A DNA stretch of 64,000 nucleotides from Stegostoma tigrinum. Taxonomy: Eukaryota. Below the pieces are notes generated by a model. That model did no database searches. It had not been told where the DNA came from and saw only the letters and a list, made by a program, of their open reading frames with translations. The stretch's first letter is position 1, and the number at the start of each line of letters is the position of its first letter. Location of the stretch: assembly GCF_030684315.1 (NCBI RefSeq), contig NC_081394.1:1674001-1738000 (forward strand). Reading direction: 5' to 3'. Positions 7,726-64,000 of the stretch are shown here, in pieces. A program made the translations under genes and the position numbers.

Positions 7726-8710
7726 TCAGCCTAGTGCGCTGTCGGGGTCAGGGAGATCATCACTGGATGCCCCTCTCTGAGCTGCTGTGACACAAAAGTT
7801 CTGTGTTTGGTTACCGCTGAGGTTGGCATCGGGCAGGTGCCAGATGACTTCTCCCGGAGGATTAGAGTAGAAATCTGCATCATTTCCCCCTGTCACTGGA
7901 GTGAAGGAGAGAACCTGGCTGCTTGTGTTTAACTGGGTGCTGATGTTTCCCTCGATTGTGAACCAGGTGTAATGAGATATCGGTGGGACACTCTCACTTG
8001 AACATGTTAATGTGACATTGTGTGCCTCTGACGCTCTACTGATGGACACTGTGGTCTCCCGTGTGATATCTGGAACAAGAGCAGAGGAGAATCGACAGGA
8101 ATCTGCATGCCCCAAAACCCTCTGAGATCTGTCCACTTCTCCAGTTCCAGCCTCTTGAGTATTTCCTGATGTCCATTGATCCACCTTCAACTATTTGGAT
8201 CCCTATGCTCTGGAATTCATTTCCCCATTTTTCACCTCCTTTAGTCAATCATGATCCTGATCCACATGAGGAGATCTGCTGTCACTGTCCAAAAGCATCG
8301 TCCAAGAGGTTGAGCGTAAAAGTGACTTAAAAGAGCAAACTGTGAAAAAATATTTGCATCTGTGGTTACACACGTCCATATGCCTGTCACTGACAACATA
8401 AATCTAACAGTCTGTCAGGGATATTAATTTGTTTGGAGAGATTTGGCTGTGGAATATCTAGTGTGCAGACATTACCAAGCACGGAAACAGAACAAAGGAG
8501 GATAAGGCGAGTATGATGGACCCAAACAAAAGACCAGAGAGACAGTTGGACTGAGTGTGAATCAGGCAGTGGTTAACGTACTGACTGCAAATGGCAATAG
8601 GGATATCAAGATTGGTGCACCCAGGGAGGGAGAGTGGACAAATTTGAATATTTGGGTCAATGTTAAACATCCAGAACTGAAATGTCACTTAGAAAAATAA
8701 CAGCAAGAAC

Positions 8711-36900: not shown

Positions 36901-39900
36901 CAATGAACTGTGGTTGGAGATTCCTCGCATTACGTACAGGGAGACTGGAGACTATCAGTGTGTGGCAGAGAATAAACATGGAGCAGTGGAGAGGTCCATA
37001 ACCATCACTGTAGAATGTGAGGCTACTGTTACATTTGTTCCTTGTTGCAATGTCTTTAGGGGGGCTGTTATCATTGTCTTGTTTCTTCTCTCGATTTCTT
37101 CAAGCCTCCCTCATTCCATGGCTCCAATGCTACCCACCATCCAATTCTTCTTCATCCTTTTCTGCTTTCACCCCCAATTTCTCCAACAATTGTTGCTGAG
37201 ACAAAGGTGGTTTTTCATCTCCATGTCCGCACTTATCTGTCTGTCTCACTTTAACTGGACGTAATGCTCCTTTTTGACTCCTGACCTTCAAATCTTTCTC
37301 TAAGGCACTTGCTTGGCTTGTTCTCTATTGAGGTGAATCTTGGCATCCTCGGCCATACCCACATTTCAAAAACTGTCACCCTCCTCTCATCCACTTTCTT
37401 TAGAATCTGACTCTCAATCCATTAAGTGTGACCCTCCACATTAGTGACCGTACCTGACATTTCCTCAGCTGCAGGCTGATGTTTTCAGATGCTCAGAGTG
37501 AAGCCAGTGGTCGCAGTGCTTGCTGTTATTTTTCTAGTCCTCATGTAACTTTTGATGTTGACTGTTGTGTCAAATATTGAAATTTGACCACTGTCCCAAC
37601 CTTGATATCTCCATTGCCATTTAGAGTCATTATGTTGGCTGTTGCCTCATTCGTATTCAGTTCAAATGTCTCCCTGTGTCTTTTGCCTGGGTCCACCATA
37701 CTCTCCAGTTCCTCATTTATTCCATTTCTGTCTGAGGTATTGTCTGCACACCAGATATTCCACAGCCACATCTTTACAACATTTACAGTGCTTGTGACAG
37801 GGATATGAATATGTGTAAAGACAGATACGGATACTTCAATACAATTTCCTTTCGCAAGTCACTCCTTATATTAACCCTCAGTGGCCAAAAATATCCTTGT
37901 CTGAAGGAGATGACAAACAAGACAACAAGATGTAGGAGTAGAAGTAGTAGTTCAGCCCATCAAGTCTGCTTCTCTGTTTTTCGAGATCGTGGCTGACCTG
38001 AAAATGCTCCAATCCACTTTCCTGCCTTTTCCTCCATAACCCCCGATTCCCTTACCAATTAAAATGCTGTCTATCTTAGCCTTGAATACATGTAATAACC
38101 TGGCCTCAACAGCCTCCAGTGGTAAAGAATTACACAGATTCACTACCCAAAAGAAAAAAAAATCTTGCTCTTATCTGTCCTAACTGGGTAACTCTGTACT
38201 CTAAAATTATGTCCCTCTAGTCCGAGACACTCCCAGAAAGGGAAACAAACTTTCCACATCTATCTTGCCAAGCCCCTCAAGTTTCCTACATGTTTCATTG
38301 AAGGTTGCCTCTCATTCTTTGAAACTCCAGTGTGTACATGCCGAAGCCACCCAACCTCTCCTCATAAGACAATCCGTCCATACCTGGGATCAGTTGAATG
38401 AATCTTCTCTGGACTATCTTCACTGTAACTTTACTGAAATAAGGGGACCAAAACCAAGATAAGGCTCCCGAAACTATTCATTATGTTCTAGATGTGATCT
38501 GACTTTTTTTAATAGTTTCAGCAAACACCCCCACATTTTACTACTCCATTCCTTTTGAAATAAAGAGCAATATTCCATTTTCCTTCCCTATTACATGCAG
38601 AGTTTGGATACTAGTTTGTTTGGAGATGTATACCTGAGTACCTCCAAATCCCGCTGTGTTGTAGCTTTTTGCTTTTTATATGATATTCAGCTCTTCTATT
38701 CTTTCTGCCAAAGTGCACACTCTCACATCTTCTCACATTATGTTCCACCTGCCACATTTTTGCAAACAAGCTTACCCTGTCTGTAAACGTCTGCAGATTC
38801 TTTGTGCTATCTTCACCACTTGCCTTCCCATCTATTCTTACATTGTTCCCAAATTTGGTTACAGTACATTCACCATCATCATGTATTCCATTAACATTTA
38901 TTGTGAATAATTGTGCCCCCAACATTGATCCTTGTGATATTCCACTTGTTATAGACTGCCATGCTCAAAATGCCCCTCTTCATCCTAACTCTCTGTTTTC
39001 TAATAGTTAGCCAGTCCTCTATCCATGCAAATTTATCATCTCCAATACTATGGGCTGTTATCTGCATGAGTGCTATCTCATCATGCACCTTCTGAAAATC
39101 CAAGTGTATTACACCCACTGCTTTTCTTACATCTATTGTACTTGTTACTCCCTCAATGAATTCTGAGATATTTGGTAGACATGATTTCCTCTTCCTTAGG
39201 ACATGGTCATTCTGCTTGATCATTTTTTGTTTGTATTTCTCAATATTCTACCATTACAGCATTTCAAATGGACTTGAACATGTTCCTAATAATGATGTTC
39301 TCTAGGTAGGTCACAGTTATCTAGTATTGGTCTCTTTCCATTTTACAATAAAGGCATTACGTTGGCGGTATTCCTATCCTCTGTAACTTTTCCAGAAAAT
39401 GAGCAAGGGATTTCAGAGCTTAGGGCTGCAGGTAGTTGAAGGTGGATCAATGGATATCAGGAAATACGCAGGAAACCAGAACTGGAGTGTAGAGATCTCA
39501 AAGGATTATGGGGCATGTGGATTCCCTGCTGATGCTCCTCTGCTCTTGTTCCAGATCCCCCACGGGAGACCACAGTGTCCACCAGTGGAGCCTCAGGTGG
39601 GATCAGAGAGGGACACAATGTCACATTAACTTGCTCCAGTGAGAGTGTCCCACCGATATCTCATTACACTTGGTTCAGGGTCAAGGGAAACACCAGCACC
39701 CGGTTAAACTCAAGCAGCCAGATTCTCTCCTTCACTCCAGTGACTCGGGGAAATGATGCAGGTTTCTACTGCACAGTGACAAACCCACTGGGTAACAGCA
39801 GCTCCAGCATGACCCACCTGAATGTAGAATGTAAGTTTTTTTCTGTCTGCCTGCCTCTTAACACTCGGGGTATCTGTGTGGGAACCACTTACTGACTGTA

Positions 39901-42900
39901 CTTTAGATGAGAGTAACCTCACTGCAAGAACCTTGCCCTCACTGAGATACAGAGAGCGATACCAGGATTGGCGACGAACAGCTCAAAGAGGGATGGTTTT
40001 AAGTGGTATCTTCAATGACAACATAGAGACAGAGAGAATAGTGGAGAGGTTTAGAAGGGAAATAATTAGCCTAAGGGTCACGGCAGCTGAAGACCTGGCT
40101 GACGGATGGAAATCAGAGGATGCTTGAGAAGCCGCAATTAAAGGAGGCAAAGGGACCTCAGAGGGTTGAGGGGAACTGGAGGATGTTACAGAGATAGGGC
40201 GGGGATGTAGGGGCTGGAGGAGATGACAGATCGGGAGGCGTTTGGGGTCTGGAGGAGATTACAGAGATAGGGAGGGTATGTAGGGGTTGGAGGAGTTAGA
40301 CATAGGGAGGGGTTTAGGGGCTGAAGGGGGTTACACAAATAGAAGGGGTGTAAAGGCTGGAGGTGGTTACAGAGATAGGGAGGGGGTGTAGGGGCTGGAG
40401 GTGTTACAGAGATAGGGAAGGGTGTAGAGGCGGGAAGTGTTACAGAGATGGGGAGGGGTGTGTTCAGATGAGGGAAGGGGCTAATGGTTGAACAGGACTG
40501 GAATAGCTAGATGACTGACTGGCCAGGAGGGCATTGTGATGATGCTCAGTAATAGCAGGAACTGTGACCATTGGCAAGTGTTTTAATGTTACGGTTCTAT
40601 CGTACGGCCCAACTCTGCTACTCTTGACTAATTGCTGCTCTTCCCACCTCAGATAAGCCAGAAATTTCCCAGGCGTCGAAATGTGCTCAGCGGGCAGAGG
40701 GGATCACCTGTGTCTGTGCAGTCAATTCCAACCCTCCTGGAGACCTCACCTGGCACCTGCCTCATACCAACCTCAGCGGTAACCAAACACAGGGAGGTTT
40801 TGTGTCGCTGCAGCTCAGAGAGGGACATCTGGTAACAGGCTCCCTGTTCCTGACAGGACCCCAGGATGATGAGGAAGTGACGGTATCCTGCTCAGTTCGA
40901 AACCTACATGGGACAGCCACGTTCAAGGTCTATCAGGTCAAAGGTGGGCTCAATCTGGGGAGGCGATGGCCCAGTGGTATTATAGCTACTGTTAATCCAG
41001 AGACCCAGATAACATTCTGGGGCCTGGGTTCAAATCCCACATGGCAGATGGTGGAATTTGAATTCAATAAATGTCTGGAATTAATAATCTAATGATGACC
41101 ATGAATCGTCAGGGAAAAACCCATCTGGTCCACTGATGTCCTTTAAGGAAGGAAACTGCCATCCTTACCTGGTCTGGCCTACATGTGACTCCAGACCCAC
41201 AACAATGTGGTTGACTCTCAACTGCCCTCTGCGCAATTAGGGATGGGCAATAAATGCTGGCCAGGCCAGTGATGCCCTCATCCTGTAAATGAATGAAGAA
41301 AACAAAAATCTCTGTTTGACACCCTCAACTCTAGAATCCTCTACTTCTTTTAGATGTTCTTTCCTACTGGCTCTTTCACCAACGCATCCTCATGATAAAG
41401 ATAGCACTGGATACAATTTGAGTCAAGCCATTGAGGGGAAAATGTCAAGCACTTTCTTCACACAAATAGGGGTTGGAAATCTGGAACTCTAACCATCATA
41501 TCCCCCGTCCCCAAAAAAGTCTTTCATTGCGAATAAATATGGATGAGTCAAATGTAACTACTGCCAATAATTTAGAAGTGTAATCGGTGATTTTATTGAA
41601 GTTTTGATGATATTGAGGTGACCAGAAGTAGGTGAATTAAGAGAAACTGTTCCCGTTGACATGATATCCAGGACTTAGGCAGTCTAAACATTGGAATAGG
41701 CCCTTAAGCAGTGAAATGTGGAAGCACTTCTGCACACACACTCTGGTCAAAGTTTGGAACTTCCTTCCAAAATTGGCGATTGGTCCATTGTTAATTACCT
41801 CAGCCACTGAAGATTAGTGAAGGTAATGATTTATCTAGACTCAAAACACTAGTTTACTGTCTCTCTGTGGATGCTGCCTGATCTGCTATGATTTCCAGTA
41901 TTTTTTGTTTTCAGTAATGATTCCTCTTGATTGTTAATCTGTGAGTTTGTAAACTAAATTTCTCAAATGCGAAGGGAGGAATGTTGATCAAAATCTGACA
42001 CATAAGCTTATTGTTTCCTTAGGTTTATAAATTGACGCATAACATATAAAAGTAAGGAAGTGATACTACACTTCTACAAATCATTGGAGTATTGTGATCA
42101 TTTATGCGCACTTTAAGAAATAATGTTCAAGCCCTGGAGAGAGTTCAAAGGAGATTTACCAAAATGATACCCGGAATGAGCAATTTTTGATACAAGGAAA
42201 GATTAGAGAAATTGAGCTCATTCTCGTTGGAACAGAAAGAATTTAAGAGGTGACCTTACCAGGGTGTTCAAAATTACAAACAACTTTGACAGGGTAAAGG
42301 AGGATAAACTTTCTGCCAGATGATATGGCAGTAATTATGAGTCACAATTTTACGATTATCAGCAAGAGAGTTACAGGTGAGAAGAGGAGGAATTTCTTGA
42401 TTCAGAGAGCTGTTAGGATTTGGTATGTTCAGCTGGAGAGAGTGGTGGAGGCAGATTTCATAGGACCTTTCAAAAGAGAGTTGTAAGACAACAAGGAGAA
42501 GGGGAGCAGTCAACACAGGACTGAAAGAGTTGTACATTAATGCAGATGATGTATGAAACAAACCAAATGAACCTGTTGGTGCAGATTTAAATTGGCAGGT
42601 ACAATCATGTAGGTATGAAGTTAATCAGGTTTGGGAACTAAGGAGACAAGTCTTATCGAAAGGACAAGGCAGAAGGACAGAGAAGGTGGGTTGCCTAGTT
42701 TGTAAGGAATGAAATTACATCGATAGCAATAAATGATATGGGGTTGGAAAACGTGGAATTTGCGTTAAATTGAACTTAAAGTTGAGAAACTGCCAATGAA
42801 ATGAGTCCCCGATGGGAGTTATGTAGAGGCCAGAATTCCTTTCAAAAATCAGGATGTAGGGAAGAAAATAAATCAGGAGATAGATAAGGCGTGAAGAAAG

Positions 42901-43672
42901 GCCCTACTGCAATAATCATGGGGGACTTCAATGCACAGTTGGACGGGGTAAATCAGGTTGGCCGCGGATCTCAAGAAATGGAGTTTGTGGAATGTCTATG
43001 TGATGGTAGTTTTGAAGAAAACAGGCACTCCTGGATTTGGGTGTAATGAGGCAGACTTGATGACAGGAGCTGGAGGCGAAGGAACCCATAAGGGCCAGTC
43101 ACCATAGTATGACAGAATTCACGCTGCAGTTTAGTGAGGGAGAAGTCTGAATCACGTGTCATGGTATTACAACTGAGTAAAGGTAGCTACAAAGACCTGA
43201 GGAAGGAGCTGGCCAGTGTTGATCGGAAGGGGAGCCTAGCCAGGAAGATGGTATGAGTTTCTGAGGTTAATTTGGGAGGCCCAACAGAAATTCATTCCAA
43301 GGAAGAGGAAACATATTAACAGAGGACAAAGCAACCATGGCTAACAGGGCAAGTCAGGAATAACAAAACTGCACAAGAAAAATCATACAATATGATGAAG
43401 ATTAGTGGGGAACTGGAGGATTAGGAAACCTTTAAAAACCAACAGAGGACTACTAAAAAAGCAATAAGGTGGGAGAAGGTGAGATATGATGGTAAATTAC
43501 CTAGTAATATTTAGATATATAAAAATTAAGAGAGAGCCAAGAGTGACATTGAACCACTGGATAATGAGGCTGGAGAAATAGTGATATGGAACAAAGAAAT
43601 GGCAATGGAACTGAATAGGTACTTTGCATCAGTTTTCCCAGTGAAAGACACCAACAGCATACCAGGATTTTG

Positions 43673-43726
<54 letters not shown>

Positions 43727-46700
43727 GGGGGGGGTGGTTGGGGCAGGGGGGTGCGGGTGGTAGGGAAGAGGTGAGTGTAGTGGCCATCATTAAGGAGGAG
43801 GTGCTGGGGAAGCTGAAAGGTCTGAAGGTGGATAAATAATCTGGACCAGATGGTCTGTACCCCAGTGTTCAGAAGGAGATAGTTGAGGAGATTGTGGAGG
43901 GATTGATGATGAGCTTTCAGTAATCATTGGAGTCGGGGAGGGTCCCAGGGGACTGGAAAGTGGCTCATGTAACCTCACCCACTTGTTTAAGAAACAAGGA
44001 AGACCGAAGGCCAGCCTGACCTTGGTCATTGGTAAGATTTTAGACTCTATTACTAAGGATGTAATGCAAAGTACTTGGTCGTACGTGGCAAAATAGGACT
44101 TAATCAGCACAGCTTCGTCAAGGGAAGGCCATGTCTGAGAAATCTGTTGGAATTCTTTGAACAAGGAATGAACAAATTAGAGTAAAGGAGAGCCAATGGA
44201 AGTGATTTATTTGGATTTCCAAAAGGCCTTTGACAGGAGGCTGCTGAATATGATAAGATAAGAGCCCATGGTGTTAGGGACATGGCACAGCATGGATAGC
44301 AGTACAGAGGTGTACTGCTGACGCTGTGTACTGCTGACGCTGTGACTGGCTAGCAGAGACAGAGGGTGCAGATAAATCGGTCTTTATCAGGACAGCAGCA
44401 GGTGACTAGTGGAGTACTACAGGGGTCAGTGTTGGGACCACAACTATTTATGCCATGTATTAGTGATTGGGATGAAGGAACTGAGTGCACTTTTGCTCCA
44501 TTTGTAGATGACACAAAGATAGGTGGCGGCACAGGCAGGGTTGAGGAAGTGGGGAGGCTGTGGAAGAATTTGGACAGGCCAGGAGAGTGGACAAAGAAGT
44601 GGCAGATGGAATACAATTGGGGAAAGTGTGAGGTTGTGCACTTTGTTAGGAGAAACAGAGGTGTGGACTATTTTCCAAATGGGGAATCACTTTGGAAATC
44701 TGAAGCACAAATGTACTGAGGAGTCATTGATCAGGAGTCTCTAAGGTTAACGTGCAGATTCAGTTGGCAGTTAGGGAGGTAAATGCAATGTTAGGATTAA
44801 TTTTAAGAGCGTTAGAAGAGCAGAGGTGTACTGCTGACGCTGTATAGGATTTGGTCACACCATTTCGAATATAGAACATATTTGGAATATTATGAACAAT
44901 TTTGGCCATGTATCTAAGGACGAATGTGCTGCTGTTTGAGGGGGTTGATGTAGGGGATGACAAGTTTATCATATGAGGAATGGATACTGGATCTGTACTC
45001 AATGGAGTTTAGAGGGATCTGATTGAAACTTACAGAATGCTGAGAGGCCTGGATAGAGTGGAAGTCAAGAAGATATTTCCACCAGTGGGACAGACTGCGA
45101 CCGGACAGCACAGCCTCAAGAGTGAAGGGATGACCCTTCAGAATGGATAATGAGGAGGAATTTCTTCGTCCAGATGGTAGTTAATCTGTGGAACTCATTG
45201 CCACAGAGGGCTCTGGAGATCAAGTCATTGAGTGTATTTGAGACAGAGATAGATAGGTTATTGATTAGTAAGGGGATCAGGTGTTATGAAAAGAAGGCTG
45301 GGCAATAACGTTGAGAAACATATCAGCCATGATCGAATGGTGGCACAGGGCCATCAGGCTAAATAGCCGAATCTTGCTCCTATGTCTTATGATCTGATGA
45401 TCTACCAGTCAGTCCCGGATGTTTCAATAAGGTTGTTTCTCATTCTTTGAAACTCCAGTGAGTAAAGGCCCAACTTATGCAGCTTCTCCTCATAAGACAA
45501 TCCCTCCATATCACGTATCAGCCAAGTGAACCTTCGCTGGACTGCCTACAGTTCCGGTCTGCCTTTCCTCAGATAAGAGGACCGAAGCAGCACATTGTAT
45601 TCCACCTAGGATCTGCCAAGTGCCTTCTATAGTTTTAGTAAAACCTCCCAACTCATACACTCCATTCTCTTTAAAATGAAGGCCAACATTCCATTTACCT
45701 TCACCTGTTACCTGGTGAACTTGGATGCGAACTGAAATAAGGCTGTCAGTTTGTGGACAGCAAGATCCCAAAGCAACAACGTGATAATGAGCTGACAACC
45801 AATTGCTTTAGTGAGCTTGTTTGTTGCACGGACAAAGATGGCAAGGTGGGTCACTAATGTCCCATTCGTGAAGGGAATCGGCTGTTTTATTCCAGTCTAT
45901 ATGTACAGGCAACTCGTCTCAAACTCCAGTGAGGCTACCTCATAGTGCTCCTCTGAACTCGCCTGTCAGTTTGTGTGGTTCAGGAAAACACCACCACGCC
46001 ACCTTCTCAAGGGGCAATAAATGCCAACGTTTCTCGAGAATAACTGTTTAAATGTGGAGTGAATTGTTCCTCAATATACAGCAGGCCATTGTTCCAAAAT
46101 GATAGCACAGTATTATTGGTTACTTTTTCAGGCAGAGACTACAATAATTGGACATTGGGATTCATCATGACTGGAAGTGTGTTAAGTGTTTTCCTGGCTG
46201 GAATCTTATTCTTTCTCTGTGCGCGCAAGTAAGTGTGAATGCTTCATTTGATTTCACTCTGAATATTCAGTTCCACTTTCTTCTCTATAGCTGGTAACTG
46301 TTCCCTTGGGTTGAGGCAGCAGACACTTCTGTAAGTGGTCTCCATGTCCCTATGACCCAGGGAGGGCCTTTCATTGTGCATCCAGATGAATAACTACGAG
46401 TTGTTGTGATCTAGAACACGCTGCCTGATAGGGAGGTGGGAGCGGATTCAACAGGAACTTCCAAACGTGTAACTGTGTCTCTGCTGCACTGACTCTCTGA
46501 TGTACAGTAACCACACTGAAATATTGTGTTCTTGCAGGAGAAAGACAGCAACTGAGGTGACAGCTTCAAAGACCAATGATGTTGCAGTGACCTACAGTCA
46601 AATCACTGTGAAGTGCAAGGTGCAGAAATTTTTGACTCATTCCAAACCATCTACTTCAGCATGTCCCTGACAAACAGTTAACCACTGATTCTCATCTCTG

Positions 46701-47444
46701 GAGACAACACTCGCTGAGTCAATTGTGCTGTCTCTCTGAATCAGGCTGAACATAACATCAGAGAATTGTACTGTCAGTGGGTCAGTGCTGAGAGAGCCCC
46801 ACACTGTCAGACGGTCGGTGCTGAGGGAGCGCTGCACTGTCAGAGGGTCATTGCTGAGAGAGCACCGTACTGTCGGACGGTCAGTGCTGAGGGAATGCCG
46901 CACTGTCAGAGGGTCAGTGCTGAGGGAGCGCTGCACTGTCAGAGGGTCAGTGGTGGGAGAGTGCCGCATTTTTATTCTGTCCTTCAGATGAGTTGTTAAA
47001 CTGACAGTGTTTTCTATCAGGTAGATGTGAACTATGAACTTAATTTTTGTGATTATGATTCAGGCTCATAACTTTAGCCTTCAAGATATGAAAGAGAGTG
47101 TTAATCCCACTAAACCATGACTGATTCCCTTGAGACTGTGCAATAATTTAAACCTATCCCTGCCGGTAAATGATGTGAGATCGTCTTCTGTTTTCTTTTC
47201 TCTGCAGGGTTCCCAAAACATGGTAGTTACTGACTCTCAGAGCACAACCAGGGACACAACTAGAGATGAGGGGACACCAGCTCCCTGGGATGAGGGCCCA
47301 GTGAGAGGAGATGCTGTACAACCCAAGAGAACTGAGGACCTTGTCTATGCCAACATCACCTTCTCAAAGCCATCTCACCATGACAGGACTGTGCACAGGG
47401 GCATGGATATAGAATACGCGGAGATCAGATTCCATACAAACTGA
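18888..47444 (+). CDS. Gene A: MAG/CD33-related-like inhibitory Siglec (leader-V-5xC2-TM-3 Tyr motifs), spliced; 748 aa if the V2 exon is skipped
   Basis: Coding exons 18888-18927, 22987-23352, 33104-33397, 33907-34188, 36735-37016, 39555-39830, 40653-40943, 46132-46228, 46538-46619, 47208-47444 all have AG/GT boundaries with compatible phases (sum 2247 nt). Siglec-type V domain (CxxIPC, E-strand GDCSL, no F-strand Cys); MAG-like last Ig domain (SKC..CVCAVNSNPP); C-terminal EYAEIR as in L-MAG and CD33-related Siglecs. Confidence 0.9.
18990..19325 (-). mobile_element. tRNA-derived SINE (family also at 22085-22400 -, 25085-25413 -, 40957-41295 +)
   Basis: Head ggaggc.atgg..tag, B box ggttc.aatccc, tail gggcaataaatgctg. 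Confidence 0.8.
19572..20775. mobile_element. Rearranged Neptune-type element with internal inversion
   Basis: 19572-20095 reads on - (pLTR plus linker); 20096-20775 reads on + (RT: MGTRMGPSYA, RYIDDCIG). Confidence 0.85.
22987..23352 (+). CDS. Gene A V-set Ig exon V1
   Basis: tttctctccccag acceptor, TCTG|GTAAGC donor, 366 nt phase 1-1; GSCAQIPC...GVWYY...LSGDLQDGDCSLIINNITREDAGYYYFK. Confidence 0.92.
23462..24693. mobile_element. Fold-back Neptune Penelope insertion; 564-bp inverted arms; TSD CCTGTTACAACTCAG(TG)
   Basis: Arms 23496-24059 and 24131-24694, no indels, about 6 mismatches; TSD 23447-23463 and 24694-24710. Confidence 0.95.
24601..24632 (+). ncRNA. Minimal hammerhead ribozyme motif (mirror copy 23558-23589 on -)
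   Basis: CU-CUGAUGA-A-GGGUC-UA-GGCCC-GAAAC-GUC-AG. Confidence 0.75.
26840..27660 (+). mobile_element. Decayed CR1 3' fragment
   Basis: FNLDKC, VVKKAF.ML, VRPHLEYCVQF and 3' UTR. Confidence 0.85.
28753..29107 (+). pseudogene. Gene A second V-set exon V2, frameshifted near its 3' end
   Basis: Paralogue of V1 with intact acceptor (ttctttgcccag) and donor (TCTG|GTGAGT), but 355 nt long; the terminal TWLHVS is in a different frame (about 14 nt missing relative to V1). Confidence 0.8.
29940..30600 (+). mobile_element. Solo-LTR-like repeat
   Basis: Homologous to 7356-7725; contains AATAAA. Confidence 0.5.
33104..33397 (+). CDS. Gene A C2-set Ig domain 2 exon
   Basis: DFTDKPMI...RCTFNTTC...LTW...HHGQTLTCRV; extra Cys typical of Siglec domain 2; 294 nt, phase 1-1, donor GTAAGT. 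Confidence 0.92.
33405..33700 (+). repeat. 33-bp minisatellite (reverse copies at 46770-46965 and 52425-52725)
   Basis: About 8 units of tcagcactgaccctccgacagtgcggcgctccc. Confidence 0.9.
33907..34188 (+). CDS. Gene A Ig domain 3 exon
   Basis: EGESAVIICSVESFPASNLMW...DTGDYQCVAENEHG; 282 nt, phase 1-1, donor GTGCGT. Confidence 0.9.
36370..36502. repeat. Compound (CA)/(CT) microsatellite
   Basis: Direct inspection. Confidence 0.9.
36735..37016 (+). CDS. Gene A Ig domain 4 exon (duplicate of domain 3)
   Basis: About 76% aa identical to the previous exon by manual count; 282 nt, phase 1-1, donor GTGAGG. Confidence 0.9.
37030..37860 (-). mobile_element. Ancient RTE-like LINE fragment, shared with the pseudogene intron (8300-9180)
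   Basis: CADN...ELNTNE...KFQYL and FEMWVWPRM motifs on the reverse strand. Confidence 0.55.
37920..39400 (-). mobile_element. Decayed CR1 RT fragment
   Basis: KSCL.N..EF, LDFQK, LGAQLFTINVN, KFG(D)N. Confidence 0.85.
39555..39830 (+). CDS. Gene A Ig domain 5 exon
   Basis: YPPRETTV...EGHNVTLTCSSESVPPISHYTWF...DAGFYCTVTNPLG; 276 nt, donor GTAAGT. Confidence 0.9.
40170..40460. repeat. Degenerate 38-bp G-rich minisatellite
   Basis: Same unit as 63745-64000. Confidence 0.8.
40653..40943 (+). CDS. Gene A membrane-proximal Ig domain 6 exon (MAG domain-5-like)
   Basis: YKPEISQASKCAQRAEGITCVCAVNSNPPGDLTW...VTVSCSVRNLHG; 291 nt, donor AAG|GTGGGC. Confidence 0.88.
41950..45720. mobile_element. Cluster of CR1 fragments, including a long decayed ORF2 (about 42560-45400, +) with (TG)n at 43675-43722
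   Basis: IIMGDFN endonuclease motif, SGVLQGSVLGPQLF, FVDDTK; a - strand fragment at 45420-45720. Confidence 0.85.
46132..46228 (+). CDS. Gene A transmembrane exon
   Basis: tactttttcag acceptor; GRDYNNWTLGFIMTGSVLSVFLAGILFFLCARK; AA|GTAAGT phase 2; no charged residue in the TM. Confidence 0.88.
46538..46619 (+). CDS. Gene A cytoplasmic exon 1 (VTYSQI)
   Basis: Phase 2-0 exon RKTATEVTASKTNDVAVTYSQITVKCK; acceptor ttcttgcag, donor AAG|GTGCAG. Confidence 0.8.
47208..47444 (+). CDS. Gene A terminal exon (LVYANI, IEYAEI)
   Basis: Long pyrimidine tract ttttcttttctctgcag; phase 0; ends EDLVYANITF...DIEYAEIRFHTN*. Confidence 0.9.
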   Translation, partial: GSQNMVVTDSQSTTRDTTRDEGTPAPWDEGPVRGDAVQPKRTEDLVYANITFSKPSHHDRTVHRGMDIEYAEIRFHTN

Positions 47445-55974: not shown

Positions 55975-56700
55975 ACAGAGTCAAACTGCACAGAAGCAGA
56001 TGATTCGGTCCAACCAGTCCGTGCTGACCATAATCCCAAACTAAACTAGTCCCACCTGCCTGCTCCTGACCCATATCCCTCCAAACCTTTCCTGTCTATG
56101 TCCCTATCCAAATGTCTTTTAAACTCTGTAACTGTACCCACACCCACCACTTCCTCAGGAAGCTCATTCCATACACGAAACACTCTTTGTGTGAAAAGGT
56201 TGCCCATGGTGCCTTTTTTAAAAATCTCTCTCCTCTCACCTTAAAAATATGCCGCCTAGGTTTACATTCCCCTACCCTGGGGTGAAAAGACCTTGTCTAT
56301 TCACTGTATCCATACACCTTATGATTTTATAAATCTCTAATTAATAAGCCCAGCCTCAGCCACTCCAGGGAAAATAGCCCCAGCCTATTCAGCCTCTCCC
56401 TGTAGCTCAAACCCTCCAACCCTGGCAACATCCCTGTAAATCTTTTCTGAGCCCTTTCAAGTTTCACAACATCCTTCCTGTAGCAGGGAGACCGGGATTG
56501 AACACAGTATTCCAAAAGTGGCCCTAACCAATGTCCTGTACAGCCCCAACATGACCCTCCCAACTCCTATACTCAATGCACTGACCAATAAAGGCGAGCG
56601 TACCGAACACCTTCCTCACCGCCCTGTCTACCTGCAACTCCACTTTCAAGGAACTATAAACCTAAACCCCAAGGCCTTTTTTTGTTCAGCAACACTCTGA
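55975..56700 (-). mobile_element. CR1 3' fragment
   Basis: LEYCVQ..SPCYRKDVVKLERAQKRFTGMLPGLEGLSY. Confidence 0.9.
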
Positions 56701-56885
56701 CTGTGCTGTAACCTGGTGCTCTCACTCAGAGTCAAATCTCCTTTGTAAAGCTCCTTCAAAGTGTCAATGTGAAAGGCATAAGATAAATGCTGGTTTTTGT
56801 TGTCGGTTGAAATGTAAGCTTTTCCTTAGCTGGTTGTTTGTCCGTTTGTGTTAAGGGTATAGCTCGTGTTGGATTATCTGAAGAG

Positions 56886-56931
56886 ATGAACTTGCTGCTA
56901 ACCCTTTTCCCACTGGCCTGCTCATTCACTG
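56886..56931 (+). CDS. Gene B leader exon: MNLLLTLFPLACSFT
   Basis: gagATG; hydrophobic leader; ACTG|GTAAGT phase 1; continues as VAVC|MQW in the V exon. Confidence 0.85.
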
Positions 56932-58454
56932 GTAAGTCTCATACAATCCTTTCCTAACATACAGGCACAAAAATGAATCCTGCTCCCTTTCATAAACAGG
57001 GCCATTTAATTTCCCTACTATCAACATCCTGAAGGTTACCATTGACCAGAAACTCAACTGGGCTCACCACATAAACACAGCGGCTACAAGAGCAGGTCAG
57101 AGGCTGGAAATCCTGCAGCGAGTAACTCCCGTCCTGACTCCCCCCAAAGCCTGTCCCACCATCGACAATACACAAGTCAGGAGGGGGATGGAATATTCCC
57201 CACTTGCCCTGGATGGGGACAGCTTCAATAACACTCAAGAAGCTTGACACCATCCAGGACAAAGCAGCCCCACTCAATTGGCTGCACATCCATAAAACAT
57301 CCCATTCCCTCCCCCCCACCGATGCTCAGCCACAGCAGTGTGTATCATCTACAAGATGCTCTGCAGTAATTCACCAAAGATCCTCAGGCAGCACCTTCCA
57401 ATCCCACGACCTCATCTATCTAGAAAGACGAGGGCAGCAGATATTTGGGAACATCAGCCCCCTGCAAGTTCCCCTCCAAGCCATTCACCATCCTGACTTG
57501 GAAATATGTTGGCAGTTCCTTCACTGCCACTGGGTCAAAAACCTGGAACTCCCTCCCTAAAGGACATTGTGGGTCAACCCTACAGCACATGGACTGTAGC
57601 GGTTCAAGAAGGCGTCTCACCCCCACCTTCTCAAGTGGGCAACTCGGGACAGGGGCAATAAATGCTGGGCCCAGACAGCGACGCCCACATCCCAGAACAG
57701 AATTAAGAAAAGGCTTTGAGATAACAAGGTGTACAGCTGGATGAACACACCAGGCCAAGCAGCATCAGAGGAGCAGGAAAGCTGTCGTTTTGGGTCTAGG
57801 CTGATGCTGCTTGGCCTGGTGTATTCATCCAGCTCTGCACCTTGTTATCTCAGATTCTCCCGCATCTACAGTTCCTACTATCTCCAGCAACCTCTGTTTG
57901 TGTTCCTGAATTACAGCATCCACAGTTCTTTCGGTTTTTATCATGCACATTCTTACTGAGGGGCAGAACATGCTGGAAGTGCCTCCTCCTGCTCACATTC
58001 CTTCTGCTTTTCTTAAATCTTCCGCAGTTGCTGTCTGCATGCAGTGGAGAGTTCATTACCCACCGAGAGTGATTGGCCTGCAGAATTCCTGTGTGCTCAT
58101 CCCATGCTCCTTCGACTACCCGAACCATGAAGAGAGCGGGCAGCTTACCATCACTGGCATTTGGTATCACGGAGTGAAACAAAGCAGAGTCACTGTGTAC
58201 CACTCGAGATCCAGCACTCAGATGAATTCAGCCTACGTTGGCCGGACCGAGATCATTGGAGACCTCAGCAGGCAGAACTGCACCTTCAAAATCCAAAACC
58301 TGCAGCTCAGTGACCAGGGGAAATACTTCTTCCGTTTTGAGATCAGAGAGATTGGCAACTGGGAGGACGTACGGGGCATTATTCTCAACGTCACACGTAT
58401 GTTCACACCACCCCACACCCCCCTCCCTCCCGGGGGAATACACAAAGTCCAAAG

Positions 58455-58491
<37 letters not shown>

Positions 58492-61400
58492 GACAGACAC
58501 ACACACACTTACTCAAACATTCACTCACATTCAANNNNNNNNNNNNNNNNNNNNNNNNNNNNNNNNNNNNNNNNNNNNNNNNNNNNNNNNNNNNNNNNNN
58601 NNNNNNNNNNNNNNNNNNNNNNNNNNNNNNNNNNNNNNNNNNNNNNNNNNNNNNNNNNNNNNNNNNNNNNNNNNNNNNNNNNNNNNNNNNNNNNNNNNNN
58701 NNNNNNNNNNNNNNNNNNNNNNNNNNNNNNNNNNNNNNNNNNNNNNNNNNNNNNNNNNNNNNNNNNNNNNNNNNNNNNNNNNNNNNNNNNNNNNNNNNNN
58801 NNNNNNNNNNNNNNNNNACGCACATGCACATAAACACACACACAAATACCTAGGCATGCACAAACATGCANNNNNNNNNNNNNNNNNNNNNNNNNNNNNN
58901 NNNNNNNNNNNNNNNNNNNNNNNNNNNNNNNNNNNNNNNNNNNNNNNNNNNNNNNNNNNNNNNNNNNNNNNNNNNNNNNNNNNNNNNNNNNNNNNNNNNN
59001 NNNNNNNNNNNNNNNNNNNNNNNNNNNNNNNNNNNNNNNNNNNNNNNNNNNNNNNNNNNNNNAACTCACATGCACATGCACATCGAATATACACACTCAT
59101 GCACAAATTTACACACACTCACACGCAAGTGCTTNNNNNNNNNNNNNNNNNNNNNNNNNNNNNNNNNNNNNNNNNNNNNNNNNNNNNNNNNNNNNNNNNN
59201 NNNNNNNNNNNNNNNNNNNNNNNNNNNNNNNNNNNNNNNNNNNNNNNNNNNNNNNNNNNNNNNNNNNNNNNNNNNNNNNNNNNNNNNNNNGCACACATAC
59301 TCACACACACTTATGCTCTCACACGCATGCATACTCACACACACATGTTCACTCATATGGTGAGTAGTTAGAAGCCTACAGAACAGAAAGCGACCCTTTG
59401 GCTCATCTAGTCATACTGATCAAAAAACATCTACCGAACTATTCTAATCCAGTTTCCCAGCACTTGGCCCAGAGCCTTGTCAGCCTCACAAGTGCACCAA
59501 CTAAACACTTCTCCAGTGGTCTGAGGGTTTCTGCCTTTCCCACCCTGACAGACAGTGAGTTCCAGTTCCTCACAGTCCTCCGGTTGGAAATGATTTTCTT
59601 CACATTGAAACCTCCTGTCCCCTTCCCTTAAATCTATCCCCCACACCACTATTTATAGCACCCAGGGGAAATAATTCTTCCTCCACCTTATCTATGCCCC
59701 TCATCATTGTATCCATCTTAACCATGACCCCATTTCTCAATCTCCTCTGCTCTAAGGAAAACCACCCCGGTCAATCCCAATCTCTTTCTGTCATTGACAC
59801 TCTCCAGCCCAGACAACATCCTGGTAAATCTACCTGTGCACCCTCTTCCAATCCTATCACGTTCCTCCGATAATGTCTATTCCAGAATGAAGCACATTAT
59901 CACCCGCTCGGATAGAAACTGGCGGGAGGCTATGTACCTGCTGCCCCTTGTCCTTCCCGATGGAAGTGGCCGTGGGTTTGGAAGGTGCTGCCTGACGGGC
60001 CTTGGTGACGTTCAGCAGAACACCTTGTAGATGGTACACACTGCTGCGGCTGAGCGTGGGTGTTGGAGGGTGTGGATGTATGAAGTTGCTAAGAGCTGTG
60101 GAGAAATCCAGTGAACAGCCATAACTATGGCAACCCGAATGCAATAAAATATGACAACATTCATGTTGGATACAGAATAAAGTCCTTTCTAAATGCTGGA
60201 AAATTCCAAATGAGTGAAAGTCTGAAACTACTCTGTGCAAAGCTGGGGGGGAGTCGGGGGCAGGGACTGTGTGGGCAACTGATCATTAAATGTTCCAGAG
60301 GCAGTACTGTGCACTGCAATCAGAGACATCAATGATTGCTGGCCCACTTGTCTTGTGGAATAGAAGACAAGGAATAGGTGTCTGCAGTGTGGTGACACAG
60401 AGTCTTGGTTGGACCATGACTGGAGTCACTGGGAGTGACTCTGGGCTCCACAGTTCACAGTGCTCCAAATGTGGGTCTAACTGAAGGATATGGAGCCTGG
60501 ACTGTGCATGGTGCTCCGAGAGTGGGTCTAACTGAGGGATATGGAGCCTGGAACTGTGCACTGTGCTCCAAATGTGGGTCTAACTGAGGGATACGGAGAC
60601 TGGAACTGTGCACGGTGCTCCGAGTATGGGTCTAACTGAGGGATACAGAGACTGGAACTGTGCACAGTGCTCCAAGTGTGAGTCTAACTAAGGGATACGG
60701 AGACTGAAACTGTGCACAGTGCTCCGAGTGTGAGTCCAACTAAGGGATACAGAGACTGGAACTGTGCACTGTGCTCCAAGTGTGGGTCTAATTGAGGGAT
60801 ATGGAGCCTGGAACTGTGCACGGCGCTCCGAGTGTGGGTCTAACTGAGGGATACCGAGAACAGAACTATGGACTATGCTCTAAGTGTTGTCTGATCATAG
60901 CTTACCTGTGCTGAATGCAATTTTGTTTTGTTTCCCCCAGAATTTCCGCAGAAGCCAACAGTAAGGGCCGTGACTGAAGTGATGGAATTGGAATCTGTTT
61001 CAGCAACTTGCTCAACCCCTTACAATTGCCCTGAAAACCCCTCCCGGCTCCGGTGGCTGGGCATCAACATGGACAGCCCTGAGTCAACTGTGAAGAGCTG
61101 CAGCTATAACGGCACCAGTTCCCTGGAGGTGTCCTTCGTCAGCTCGCACCTAGATCACAACCTCGTACTGACCTGTGTGGTCACTGTCGATGGGCTACAC
61201 CTTTCCAGCCACACTGAGATTACACTGCGTGTGAAACGTGAGCCTGGGTGAAAGGAGCTGACATAGGGAGGGAACAACCTCGGTGGAATTGAGGGAGGCA
61301 CAGGAGGAGGAGGGGCAAAGTAAGGAGGATTTGTAAACTAGCATCTGTCCATCCATCCTATCTGTCTGTCTGTGTTTCATTCTCTCTTCATTTCTTCCTT

Positions 61401-63575
61401 TCTGTTATCTCTCTCTATCTCTCACACACGTGCTGTCTCTCATATACACACATAATTTCTCTCNNNNNNNNNNNNNNNNNNNNNNNNNNNNNNNNNNNNN
61501 NNNNNNNNNNNNNNNNNNNNNNNNNNNNNNNNNNNNNNNNNNNNNNNNNNNNNNNNNNNNNNNNNNNNNNNNNNNNNNNNNNNNNNNNNNNNNNNNNNNN
61601 NNNNNNNNNNNNNNNNNNNNNNNNNNNNNNNNNNNNNNNNNNNNNNNNNNNNNNNNNNNNNNNNNNNNNNNCACATGCACATACTTATACACACAGACTC
61701 TCACACACACACTTACACATTTACTCAAGCACACATTTACTCACCCACACTTTTACACACACTGACACACACAATCACATACTCACACGCACACACCTTC
61801 AGTGGTCGTGTCCAAAAAGGAATTTGGCGATTAACTGAAGAAAAAAGATGGGTTGGGTAGCTATGGGTAGAAGTCAGGATCCTGCGAAGGCCGGGTTGCC
61901 TGAGCAGAGAGCCAGCATGGATTAGATGGGTCAACTGCCTCCTCCTGTGGTCTTACGAGTTTGTACGAATGGAAAGAAGCCAGAAGGCGTGGTGCTGCAG
62001 CGATTCCCGACCTGACCAGTTCCCCTTTGCCTGCCTATAGATCTCGCCAAGAACGTTACTGTGTTGGTCTTCCCACATGCGGAGCCCATCGAGGAAGGCA
62101 GCGCTGTCGCGCTGTTCTGTGACACTTCAAGTAGTGAGCCGGGGGTCAGCGCCTACAGCTGGTACAAAGACGGCCAGGCCTTGGCCCCCGGGAAGATCCT
62201 GCGGTTTGACAGTGTGCGGACCCAGGACGGGGGCATGTACTACTGCTCAGCCAGGAATGAACTGGGACAAGTGGCCTCCCACAACATCTCGCTGATCGTG
62301 CTGCATAGGAACAGTGAGCCTGGGTGGGGAGGGGTGTGGGTGGTGGTGGGGGTGGGGTGGGAGTGCGAAGGGTCGGTGATGTGGGTGGGGGTGGGTGAGG
62401 GAAAATGTGTGGGATGATGGGTGGGTGAGGTGAGGTGGACTGGGTGGGGCAGGGGAAGTGAGAGGTGTGTGTGGGGTGGGGAAATGGGAGTGTGTGGGGT
62501 GGGGGAGTGAGGGGTGGGGGAGTGAGGGTGGTGTTTGGGGTGGTGGAATGAGAGGGTGGGGGAGTGAGGGTGGTGTATGGGGTGGGGAAATGAGGGGTGT
62601 GTGGGGTGGGGGAGTGAGGGGTGTGTGGGGTGGAGGAGTGAGGGGTGTGTGGAGTGGGGGGTGCGGGTGTGGGGTTGGTGAGGTGTGTGGTGGAGGGCGG
62701 TGGGGTTTGGTTTGGGCGGTGGGAGGTACTGGTTCCAGGCAAGAGACCTGGCAAGTCCTGTGGTGGGGTGGAGGGTTGGGCGGAGGGAGGGAGAAAAAGG
62801 CTTGCATTCATCTAACACCTCAGGGCTTTGAGCCACTTTGTCACCAGGAAAGGATATTATTCAGACCACAGCCACAGGGAGGGAATGGGAGGAAAATGGA
62901 GACCAATGGCTGCAGACAGACTGATACAAAGACAGACGCAGGAAGACAGACAGGGTCAGACAGATACACAGACACATAGGCATTACAGTGATGCATTGGC
63001 TATTGAACGGACCGAGCAAACCTCAGGCCGAGATGAATGATCAGGAACCACAATGTATGGATTACACTGGGCCCACTGGACAATTTAGATTCAGTTCATT
63101 AACATGAGCCTGGAATCCAGAGCTAATCTCAGCACACACAGCCACACAGCAACTGTTGTTTCAGTACCCATCGGGGAGTGGAAGAAATTTGCAGTCCCTA
63201 ACCAGGACTGGGCCGACATGCAACTCCAGACCCACAACAACGGTGCTAGATTCCAAACTTAACGGGGGGCATTTAGGGACGGAGAAGACATGTAGACCTG
63301 ACCTGAGAGATACCCCTGTCCTGGGAATGAAGGAAGAGTCTGTGAGGTTGGCAATGAGCTCAATGAAGCCTGAAATCTGTTCAAACTTGGTGATAATATC
63401 CACCCAGCACAGTCCAACAACTTTCTGTTGTGTGTTAACCAAGTATGACACTACTCCTTAATCCAGGTTACCAGATTAACCACTGGAGGACTGCTGTTCT
63501 GTGGCTCATTGGGATCGTCAGCGTGTGTGTCTGTGCTGGGATCGCACTGTGCCTGATTATCCGCTATTACAGAAA
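56886..63575 (+). CDS. SIGLEC1: Gene B: sialoadhesin (SIGLEC1/CD169)-like Siglec with three Ig domains and a TM; 3' end outside the window; orthology unproven
   Basis: Exons 56886-56931, 58028-58396, 60941-61237, 62041-62313, 63467-63575 splice in frame. Motifs YFFRFEIREIGNWEDVRG, CSTPYNC, TEITLRVK, SSEPGVSAYSWYKDG, SHNISL parallel recalled mammalian SIGLEC1 d1-d3 (YNFRFEISEVNRWSDVKG, CSTPYVC, SEIHLQVK, SSYPAVSSIKWLKDG, SPPISL). Confidence 0.75.
56985..57710 (+). mobile_element. CR1/L2-group LINE 3' fragment with a SINE-shared tail
   Basis: LKKLDTIQDKAA, SF....SKTWNSLP; tail gggcaataaatgctgg. Confidence 0.8.
57718..57883. mobile_element. Short fold-back Penelope pLTR pair
   Basis: Inverted arms 57718-57768 and 57802-57852. 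Confidence 0.85.
58028..58396 (+). CDS. Gene B V-set Ig exon with essential Arg (CGT 58333-58335)
   Basis: SCVLIPC, GIWY, GRTEIIGD..NCTF, DQGKYFFR; 369 nt phase 1-1; donor GTATGT. Confidence 0.93.
58456..59350. repeat. (CA)-rich tract with N gaps 58535-58817, 58871-59062, 59135-59290 (another at 61464-61671)
   Basis: Direct inspection. Confidence 0.95.
60445..60880. repeat. Second 52-bp minisatellite array, about 8 units
   Basis: Same unit as 54490-55040. Confidence 0.95.
60941..61237 (+). CDS. Gene B C2-set Ig domain 2 exon
   Basis: PQKPTV...CSTPYNCPE...LRW...DHNLVLTC; 297 nt; acceptor ttttgtttcccccag, donor GTGAGC. Confidence 0.9.
62041..62313 (+). CDS. Gene B Ig domain 3 exon
   Basis: EGSAVALFC...YSWYKDG...DGGMYYCSARNELG; 273 nt; donor GTGAGC. 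Confidence 0.9.
62320..62790. repeat. G/T-rich low-complexity tract
   Basis: Repeated ggggtgtgtggggtgggg units. Confidence 0.85.
63467..63575 (+). CDS. Gene B transmembrane exon
   Basis: ccttaatccag acceptor; SYQINHWRTAVLWLIGIVSVCVCAGIALCLIIRYYRK; AA|GTGAGT; phase 1-2, the same as the gene A TM exon. Confidence 0.85.
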
Positions 63576-63744
63576 GTGAGTTACCGGTATCACAGCTCAG
63601 TCACTTGTTGCTACGAGAGTCTCAAGTGAGAAGAGAGAGTGAAACAGTGGCAGGGAGGGAGTCCCTTGGGCTCAGGACCCCAAGGGTGGGCCACCAGTGG
63701 CAGAGCGATGGGAATTGGGGAATGCTGGAGGAGCTGAGATTGGA

Positions 63745-64000
63745 CAAGGGGACAGAGATAGGGAGGGGGTGTAGGGGCTGGAGGGGGTTACAGAGATAGG
63801 GAGGGGGTGTAGGGGCTGGAGGGGGTTACAGAGACAGGGAGGGGGTGTAGGGGCTGGAGGAGGTTACAGAGATAGGGAGGGGGTGTAGGGGCCGGAGGGG
63901 GTTACAGAGACAGGGAGGGGGTGTAGGGGCTGGAGGAGGTTACAGAGATAGGGAGGGGGTGTAGGGGCTGGAGGGGGTTACAGAGATAGGGAGGGGGTGT
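63745..64000. repeat. 38-bp G-rich minisatellite running off the window
   Basis: cagagatagggagggggtgtaggggctggagggggtta. Confidence 0.95.

What the first reader, a model, noticed from the sequence alone, without database searches (positions are those of the whole stretch)
56886..63575. A three-domain 'mini-sialoadhesin' sitting inside a Siglec cluster
Seen: leader-V-C2-C2-TM exons splice in frame with no other Ig exon between 62313 and 63467. Known: mammalian SIGLEC1 has 17 Ig domains that lift the binding site above the glycocalyx, lacks ITIMs, and lies apart from the CD22/MAG/CD33 chromosome; its binding triad is Trp2, Arg97, Trp106. Gene B keeps the equivalents (QWRV, YFFR, GNWED) and the signatures FRFEI...W.DV.G and CSTPY.C. 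Inference: a short SIGLEC1-lineage receptor next to a MAG/CD33-like gene could be the ancestral pre-expansion, still-clustered state, or a shark-specific truncated paralogue acting more in cis signalling than in long-reach adhesion.
Basis: partly seen in the sequence, partly recalled or inferred. Interest (0 to 1): 0.85.

Follow-up and report, generated by a model that had tools for sequence, protein, structure and literature searches.

The report
Short sialoadhesin-like Siglec gene in a shark
An intact shark gene encodes a sialic-acid receptor whose binding domain carries the hallmarks of macrophage sialoadhesin (Siglec-1), but it has only three Ig domains instead of 17 and lies next to another Siglec gene; this bears on how Siglec-1 arose, although orthology and the full transcript remain unproven.

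Summary
On the + strand, five exons join in frame with consensus splice sites: leader 56886-56931, V-set 58028-58396, C2 60941-61237, C2 62041-62313, TM 63467-63575. Profile scans find no other Ig exon in 47.5-64 kb, and none between 62313 and 63467. All four N runs lie inside introns, within CA-rich simple repeats.

The V domain is a Siglec lectin domain. Its best match by sequence and by fold is mouse sialoadhesin D1. It keeps the Trp/Arg/Trp triad and the Siglec cysteines.

Two signatures support a SIGLEC1 affinity:
- FRFE[IV]x5W occurs in 139/146 tetrapod sialoadhesin V domains. Among 354 other Siglec-like V domains it occurs only in the two shark orthologues, which are auto-annotated "sialoadhesin-like".
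- CSTPYxC in domain 2 occurs in 118/137 sialoadhesins and 0/164 other proteins.

Trees do not resolve the question. A clade with tetrapod SIGLEC1 is as likely as the best tree (AU p 0.52) but is not demonstrated. A clade with the neighbouring gene A is rejected (p 0.028).

The tail exons lie beyond the window.

Verdict: a real, short, sialoadhesin-like Siglec and a new variant of a known kind. The claim of an "ancestral pre-expansion state" is untested. The scan had not noted this gene on other DNA.

The parts
56886..56931 (+). Exon 1: start codon and hydrophobic leader (15 codons plus 1 base), donor GTAAGT
   Evidence: the leader resembles that of the orthologue P0007 (...VAVC-xQW)
58028..58396 (+). 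Exon 2: V-set sialic-acid-binding domain (phase 1-1)
   Evidence: Pfam V-set and Ig_CD22. Best PDB sequence match is sialoadhesin, E 6e-22. AF2 model pLDDT 92.6, with sialoadhesin D1 as top fold matches at TM 0.87-0.92
58045..58047 (+). Trp codon aligned with sialoadhesin Trp2
   Evidence: alignment to 1url/1od7
58333..58335 (+). Arg codon aligned with the essential Arg97 (YFFRFEI)
   Evidence: invariant column R102 in alignment A1
58360..58362 (+). Trp codon aligned with Trp106, nine residues after the Arg (signature FRFE[IV]x5W)
58397..60940 (+). Intron 2. Holds N runs at 58535-58817, 58871-59062 and 59135-59290 inside a CA-rich repeat, and a 52-bp tandem repeat at 60456-60887
   Evidence: no Ig-like ORF
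60941..61237 (+). Exon 3: C2-set domain 2 (phase 1-1), with CSTPYNC at 61009-61029
   Evidence: motif specificity
61238..62040 (+). Intron 3, with an N run at 61464-61671 inside a CA-rich repeat
62041..62313 (+). Exon 4: C2/I-set domain 3 (phase 1-1)
   Evidence: Pfam Ig_2 2e-12; PDB best match is CD22 d6-d7
62314..63466 (+). Intron 4: G-rich minisatellite (62322-62692) plus unique sequence, no N and no Ig exon
63467..63575 (+). Exon 5: stalk, uncharged transmembrane helix and RYYRK stop-transfer. Strong donor AAA|GTGAGT; TGA at 63577-63579 if not spliced
22965..47444 (+). Context: neighbouring Siglec gene A, with two V exons, at least four C2 exons and a tail
   Evidence: earlier notes s1-882182 and s1-882310

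Best explanation
Gene B is an intact gene for a type I membrane Siglec. It has a signal peptide, one V-set lectin domain, two C2-set domains, a short stalk, an uncharged transmembrane helix and a basic stop-transfer sequence. A cytoplasmic tail is probably encoded beyond the window.

The V domain should bind sialic acid as sialoadhesin does (inferred from homology). The Arg at 58333-58335 would pair with the carboxylate. The two Trp residues at 58045-58047 and 58360-58362 would pack against the N-acetyl and glycerol groups.

The gene belongs to a shark lineage that also includes Heptranchias XP_067831570.1 and a Pristiophorus protein. Its nearest known relative is tetrapod SIGLEC1.

With only three Ig domains, the binding site would sit within the cell's own glycocalyx. 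The receptor is therefore expected to be largely engaged in cis, or to need clustering or unmasking, rather than acting as a long-reach adhesin (inferred). The TM helix has no charged residue, so pairing with a DAP12-type adaptor is unlikely. Whether the tail is inhibitory or silent is unknown.
For: - Exon anatomy and phases.
- Only three Ig exons, then a TM exon.
- Pfam V-set, Ig_CD22 and Ig_2.
- Sialoadhesin D1 is the best solved relative by sequence (81 bits, against 53 for MAG) and by fold.
- The triad and three Cys are conserved.
- In a 1.8-billion-protein library the best single-domain hits are shark 'sialoadhesin-like' proteins (52% identity), then tetrapod sialoadhesins (41-43%).
- FRFE[IV]x5W occurs in 139/146 sialoadhesin V domains. 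Among 354 other V domains it occurs in 2, and both are the shark orthologues. CSTPYxC occurs in 118/137 sialoadhesins and 0/164 others.
- Without CD22 in the set, a starred split (99/93) puts the shark clade on the sialoadhesin side.
- A clade with gene A is rejected (p 0.028).
- Sialoadhesin truncated to four or fewer Ig domains fails to bind red cells because of cis interactions (PMC10027830).
Against: - Rooted on true CD22, the V tree places the shark clade in a zero-length trichotomy with tetrapod sialoadhesin and the gene A/teleost group.
- The D2 tree puts it with the other fish Siglecs at 88/79 support.
- A clade with V2 of the elasmobranch CD22-like family is not rejected (p 0.215).
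- The two shark orthologues lack the CSTPYxC motif.
- Domain 3 is generic.
- There is no RNA evidence, and the tail is unseen.
- The orthologous protein models are truncated, so the three-domain count rests on this one locus.
- The comparison set for the signatures lacks mammalian CD33-related Siglecs and MAG.
Confidence: 0.6

Rival explanations
1. Gene B is an elasmobranch-specific Siglec paralogue and not an orthologue of SIGLEC1. On this reading, its sialoadhesin-like features are ancestral characters kept from the common Siglec ancestor, or are convergent.
For: - The backbone of the V tree rooted on CD22 is unresolved.
- D2 groups with the fish Siglecs.
- A clade with V2 of shark CD22-like proteins is not rejected.
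- Path distances to teleost short Siglecs and to tetrapod sialoadhesin are about equal.
- The gene lies in a Siglec cluster.
- P0007 and P0009 lack CSTPYxC.
Against: - The signature FRFE[IV]x5W is shared only with sialoadhesin among 500 V domains.
- Best-hit scores and the fold match favour sialoadhesin.
- The SIGLEC1 clade costs no likelihood.
Confidence: 0.28
2. The real product is longer than three Ig domains. Either the TM exon is optional and exon 4 (phase 1) splices to Ig exons beyond base 64000, or an exon is hidden in an N run.
For: - All Ig exons are phase 1-1, so any number can be added without breaking the frame.
- The window ends 425 nt after the TM exon.
- The 283-nt N run could just hold a C2 exon.
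- Elasmobranch CD22-like proteins show V-C2-C2 followed directly by another V-C2-C2.
Against: - The TM exon is well formed and in phase, with a polypyrimidine acceptor, a consensus donor and a basic anchor; it is a rare feature in this window.
- P0007 joins V, C2 and C2 with no extra domain.
- The N runs sit in CA repeats.
- The window V is only 34-39% identical to the CD22-like V domains.
Confidence: 0.17
3. The locus is an unexpressed or decaying gene copy.
For: No RNA run held the stretch on record. No annotated protein from this or any closely related species was found.
Against: All five exons are open. All splice sites are consensus. All structural Cys and binding residues are intact.
Confidence: 0.07

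Closest known systems
Tetrapod sialoadhesin (SIGLEC1/CD169), e.g. mouse D1 structures 1QFO/1URL and Pelodiscus XP_025042337.1
   Same: - V domain 37-43% identical, with TM-score about 0.9.
- Trp/Arg/Trp triad with the same Arg-to-Trp spacing.
- FRFE[IV]x5W and CSTPYxC signatures.
- The three Siglec cysteines.
- V-C2-C2 collinear with D1-D3.
- Uncharged TM.
   Different: - 3 Ig domains instead of 17 (tetrapod models are 1,480-2,500 aa).
- Lies 9.4 kb from another Siglec gene, whereas human SIGLEC1 (20p13) is away from the 19q13 Siglec genes (from established knowledge).
- Secondary contact residues differ (positions of Tyr44, Ser103, Arg105 and Leu107 read Val, Ile, Asn and Glu).
- Tail unknown.
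Shark 'sialoadhesin-like' models: Heptranchias perlo XP_067831570.1 (278 aa) and Pristiophorus japonicus UPI00398EA09E (172 aa)
   Same: Orthologues: 51-52% identity in V, 47% in D2, same domain order and joints, and the same FRFE[IV]x5W signature. They form a clade with the window V (99/99).
   Different: Both models stop inside an Ig domain, so neither shows a TM or the domain count. Their D2 motif reads CSISHSC or CSTRYSC.
Elasmobranch 'B-cell receptor CD22-like' family (e.g. Carcharodon XP_041037097.1, 1,282 aa; found in at least 11 species)
   Same: Begins with V-C2-C2 units. Its V2 falls on the sialoadhesin side of the unrooted tree.
   Different: - Two V domains and about 11 Ig domains.
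- Tails of 170-177 aa with 4-5 ITIM/ITSM-like motifs.
- V domains only 34-39% identical to gene B.
- Trp lies 8, not 9, residues after the Arg.
Gene A of this window and its relatives (Scyliorhinus 'Siglec-8', Mustelus 'Siglec-13')
   Same: Neighbour on the same strand, with a Siglec V fold.
   Different: Tandem V exons. Lys replaces the essential Arg in both window copies. A clade with gene B is rejected (AU p 0.028).

Membership tests
Siglec family (I-type lectins) | N-terminal V-set domain with the essential F-strand arginine | tested here: met
   Pfam V-set and Ig_CD22. Arg aligned to Arg97 of 1QFO. Invariant R102 in alignment A1.
Siglec family (I-type lectins) | Cysteine pattern: B-E intrasheet pair plus an extra Cys for the bond to domain 2 | tested here: met
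   Cys at 58090, 58105 and 58279 align with the three Cys of sialoadhesin D1. D2 carries the CxxxxxC pair. The disulfides themselves are inferred.
Siglec family (I-type lectins) | Binds sialic acid | not testable with these tools
   Needs a recombinant protein and a glycan array.
SIGLEC1 / sialoadhesin | V domain closest to sialoadhesin among Siglecs | tested here: met
SIGLEC1 / sialoadhesin | Forms a clade with tetrapod SIGLEC1 | tested here: inconclusive
   V tree rooted on CD22 gives a trichotomy. AU p 0.52 (V) and 0.42 (D2) when held together. The D2 free tree places it elsewhere at 88/79.
SIGLEC1 / sialoadhesin | Lineage signatures FRFE[IV]x5W (V) and C[ST][ST]PYxC (D2) | tested here: met
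   139/146 against 2/354, and 118/137 against 0/164. The window has both.
SIGLEC1 / sialoadhesin | 17 Ig domains (one V plus 16 C2) | tested here: not met
   Three Ig exons, then a TM exon. Caveats: intron gaps and the end of the window.
SIGLEC1 / sialoadhesin | Short tail without ITIM | not testable with these tools
   Tail exons lie beyond base 64000. If exon 5 is not spliced, the tail is RYYRK.
SIGLEC1 / sialoadhesin | Locus separate from other Siglec genes | tested here: not met
   Gene A ends about 9.4 kb upstream on the same strand.
CD22 (Siglec-2) | V domain and D2 group with CD22; long ITIM tail | tested here: not met
   CD22 V scores 22 bits and sits on a long branch as the outgroup. 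A separate CD22-type family exists in elasmobranchs.
Gene A type / CD33- or MAG-like fish Siglecs | V domain groups with gene A and its relatives | tested here: not met
   AU test: log-likelihood 14.7 lower when held together, p 0.028.

The most novel reading that the evidence does not exclude
Gene B is the cartilaginous-fish orthologue of SIGLEC1 and preserves the ancestral state: a short V-C2-C2 receptor still linked to other Siglec genes. On this reading, the 17-domain, cis-escaping, unlinked sialoadhesin of tetrapods arose later by internal C2 duplication and relocation.
Probability: 0.22. Interest if true: 0.7.

Novelty: new variant of a known kind. Interest (0 to 1): 0.48.

Why it matters
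Sialoadhesin's 17 domains are thought to exist so that the lectin domain escapes cis ligands. Truncation to four or fewer domains abolishes cell binding (PMC10027830). A natural three-domain receptor with a sialoadhesin-type binding site would test that idea directly. If orthology holds, it would also date the domain expansion and the break-up of an ancestral Siglec cluster to after the split of cartilaginous and bony vertebrates.

No ray-finned-fish protein among the 150 best library hits carries the sialoadhesin signature. Sharks may therefore be the only non-tetrapods that keep it.

Tried and rejected
- **Read laying.** The first call failed because of short pieces between N runs. Those 37 letters were sent to no search tool afterwards.
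- **Searches for an annotated protein of this gene.** A search with P0007 (153-486 aa range) found only P0007, P0009 and one teleost protein. No protein of this gene from this species or a close relative turned up.
- **Search for a long shark SIGLEC1.** The search with turtle sialoadhesin residues 1-350 listed only tetrapods among its best 120 of 204 hits. That neither shows nor excludes a long shark SIGLEC1.
- **TM exon.** It has no significant match to any collected protein.
- **Domain 3.** It is no closer to sialoadhesin D3 than to other C2 domains, so I built no D3 tree.
- **Literature.** The 2018 review of Siglec evolution is not held. The fish Siglec papers I read do not mention cartilaginous fish.
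- **Joined protein left out.** Every search, fold and tree used single exons by reference, so I did no D1-D3 concatenated phylogeny and no whole-protein search.
Full report
**Observation**

I read 56500-64000 and translated each proposed exon by reference. Five + strand exons join in frame:
- E1: 56886-56931, ATG plus a hydrophobic leader, ends in phase 1.
- E2: 58028-58396, 369 nt.
- E3: 60941-61237, 297 nt.
- E4: 62041-62313, 273 nt.
- E5: 63467-63575, 109 nt.

E2 to E4 are phase 1-1, as is usual for Ig-superfamily exons. All acceptors end in AG after a pyrimidine tract. The donors are GTAAGT, GTATGT, GTGAGC, GTGAGC and GTGAGT. The joint codons read Val, Gln, His and Ser.

Pfam calls E2 V-set (1.3e-9) and Ig_CD22 (1.2e-8). 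It calls E4 Ig_2 (2e-12). E3 gives weak Ig_2 and C2-set_2 matches.

E5 encodes a short stalk, a 23-residue uncharged hydrophobic stretch and RYYRK. If its strong donor (AAA|GTGAGT) is not used, a TGA follows at once.

All searches, the fold and the trees used single exons by reference.

**Is it more than chance, and is anything hidden?**

tblastn with the four exon translations, and profile HMMs for V, D2-type and C2 domains run with filters off on all 1,596 six-frame ORFs of the window, gave the same result. Between 47.5 and 64 kb only the three Ig exons score (141, 86 and 98 bits). Nothing scores between 62313 and 63467. That stretch contains no N and is largely a G-rich minisatellite.

The hydropathy of the TM exon (2.80 over 21 residues) is reached by only one other stop-free segment in the six frames of the 64 kb, and that segment is a translated CA microsatellite.

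The four N runs are all intronic and at least 138 nt from an exon, so no reading frame crosses a gap. They are embedded in CA-rich degenerate repeats that continue on both sides and in the short pieces between them. Because the Ig exons are symmetrical, frame continuity cannot exclude a hidden exon. Only the 283-nt run is long enough for a small one. The orthologous Heptranchias protein joins V to C2 to C2 directly, with the same His at the second joint.

I could not test continuity with reads. Read laying first failed on short pieces between N runs. They were part of the window file read by my local scripts.

**What the V domain is**

Against all PDB sequences, the best match is mouse sialoadhesin D1 (E 6e-22, 81 bits, full length). 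Next come MAG (53), Siglec-10 (52), CD33 (44), Siglec-7 (43), Siglec-15 (39) and CD22 (22).

In that alignment, the window's Trp (58045-58047), Arg (58333-58335) and Trp (58360-58362) fall on Trp2, Arg97 and Trp106. The three cysteines of the Siglec V domain are also in place. Secondary contact positions differ.

An AlphaFold2 model built on a 22-row alignment has pLDDT 92.6. Its six best Foldseek matches in the PDB are all sialoadhesin D1 (TM 0.87-0.92, rmsd 1.8-2.0 Å). Siglec-10, MAG, Siglec-7 and CD33 follow at TM 0.80-0.85.

**Relatives**

A full HMMER pass over 1.84 billion representative proteins gave two best single-domain hits, both at 52% identity. They are 'sialoadhesin-like' proteins of Heptranchias perlo (P0007, 278 aa) and Pristiophorus japonicus (P0009, 172 aa). 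Tetrapod sialoadhesins of 1,482-2,505 aa follow at 41-43%.

P0007 has the same leader-V-C2-C2 order but stops inside domain 3. P0009 stops inside domain 2. Neither shows a TM or a domain count.

I did not check that.

**Phylogeny**

A V tree of 100 rows without CD22 has a starred split (99/93). One side holds the window V with P0007 and P0009 (clade 99/93), 48 tetrapod sialoadhesins and the second V of an elasmobranch 'CD22-like' family. The other side holds gene A with its relatives and the short teleost 'MAG-like/Siglec-5-like' proteins.

After I obtained true CD22 sequences and rooted on them, the backbone collapsed. The shark clade (99/99) then sits in a zero-length trichotomy with tetrapod sialoadhesin (100/99) and the gene A/teleost group.

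AU tests on the V domain:
- Shark clade held with sialoadhesin: costs no likelihood (p 0.52).
- Held with gene A: costs 14.7 log units (p 0.028).
- Held with the CD22-like V2: costs 6.3 log units (p 0.215).

A domain-2 tree puts tetrapod sialoadhesin D2 as sister to all the fish groups, gene B included (88/79). The sialoadhesin grouping is not rejected there either (p 0.415).

Domain 3 is a generic C2 domain. Its best hit in a given sialoadhesin is sometimes D3 and sometimes another domain.

**Signatures**

- FRFE[IV]x5W, that is a Trp nine residues after the essential Arg, occurs in 139 of 146 tetrapod sialoadhesin V domains. It occurs in 2 of 354 other V domains, and those two are P0007 and P0009. 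The window has it too.
- C[STI][ST][PQ]YxC in domain 2 occurs in 118 of 137 sialoadhesins and in none of 164 other proteins. The window reads CSTPYNC, but P0007 (CSISHSC) and P0009 (CSTRYSC) do not match.

The comparison set was gathered by likeness to this V domain, to turtle sialoadhesin and to shark CD22-like. It lacks mammalian CD33-related Siglecs and MAG, so the specificity holds within that set only.

No ray-finned-fish protein among the 150 best hits carries the V signature. Teleost 'sialoadhesin-like' models with 7-10 V domains rank high only through summed scores.

**Context**

Gene A lies upstream on the same strand. It has V exons at 22995-23348 and 28764-29084 and C2 exons at 33127-39829, with a tail noted by others at 46538-47444. 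Its V exons are Siglec-like and carry Lys in place of the essential Arg. The two genes are 9.4 kb apart, so the description as a cluster is fair.

Elasmobranchs also have a conserved long family of 919-1,288 aa, found in at least 11 species. Its architecture is V-C2-C2-V-C2-C2-C2..., with a TM and tails of 170-177 aa carrying 4-5 ITIM/ITSM-like motifs. That is a CD22-type receptor, not a sialoadhesin-type one. I found no long shark protein with a sialoadhesin-signature V domain, but the searches could not exclude one (one search listed only 120 of 204 hits).

**How it likely works**

Shown: an intact gene for a membrane protein with a Siglec lectin domain, two C2 domains and an uncharged TM.

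Inferred from homology: sialic acid is bound through the Arg/Trp/Trp site. No DAP12-type adaptor is used.

Inferred from Klaas et al. 2023 (PMC10027830): sialoadhesin cut to four or fewer Ig domains no longer binds red cells, because the site is masked in cis. A three-domain receptor should therefore act mainly in cis or after unmasking.

Unknown: the tail and its motifs, the expressing cells and the ligand linkage.

**Verdict**

The gene is sialoadhesin-like by best hit, by fold and by two near-exclusive signatures. Orthology to SIGLEC1 is allowed by the trees but not demonstrated. The three-domain count rests on one locus with no transcript evidence. 'Ancestral versus truncated' is undecided. 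I class it as a new variant of a known kind, of moderate interest.

Noticed in passing
window 22965-23406 and 28713-29109: Both V exons of the neighbouring gene A read Lys where Siglecs have the essential Arg (YYYFKLTF, HYFFKIEF). Their shark relatives P0004 and P0017 keep Arg (YYFRIEF).
   Followed up: partly
P0008, P0291-P0297, P0022, P0027 (elasmobranch 'B-cell receptor CD22-like'): A conserved elasmobranch family of 919-1,288 aa has two V-C2-C2 units in tandem ahead of further C2 domains, a TM and a 170-177 aa tail with 4-5 ITIM/ITSM-like motifs. This would be a CD22-type receptor with two lectin-like domains. I did not check whether this architecture has been described.
   Followed up: partly
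window 7870-8061 and 11231-11434, minus strand: Two weak Ig-like ORFs lie on the opposite strand (profile scores 31 and 15 bits; Pfam Ig_3 below its cut-off). They may be exons of a third Ig-superfamily gene.
   Followed up: partly
P0001, P0002 and other teleost 'sialoadhesin-like' models: Teleost proteins auto-named sialoadhesin-like carry 7-10 V-like domains, and none has the sialoadhesin F-G signature. The name may be misleading, or the gene models may merge tandem genes.
   Followed up: no
window 60456-60887, 62322-62692, 63752-64000: Three minisatellites lie in or after gene B: a 52-bp unit x8.3 in intron 2, a G-rich array in intron 4, and a 38-bp unit x6.6 that runs off the end of the window.
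   Followed up: no
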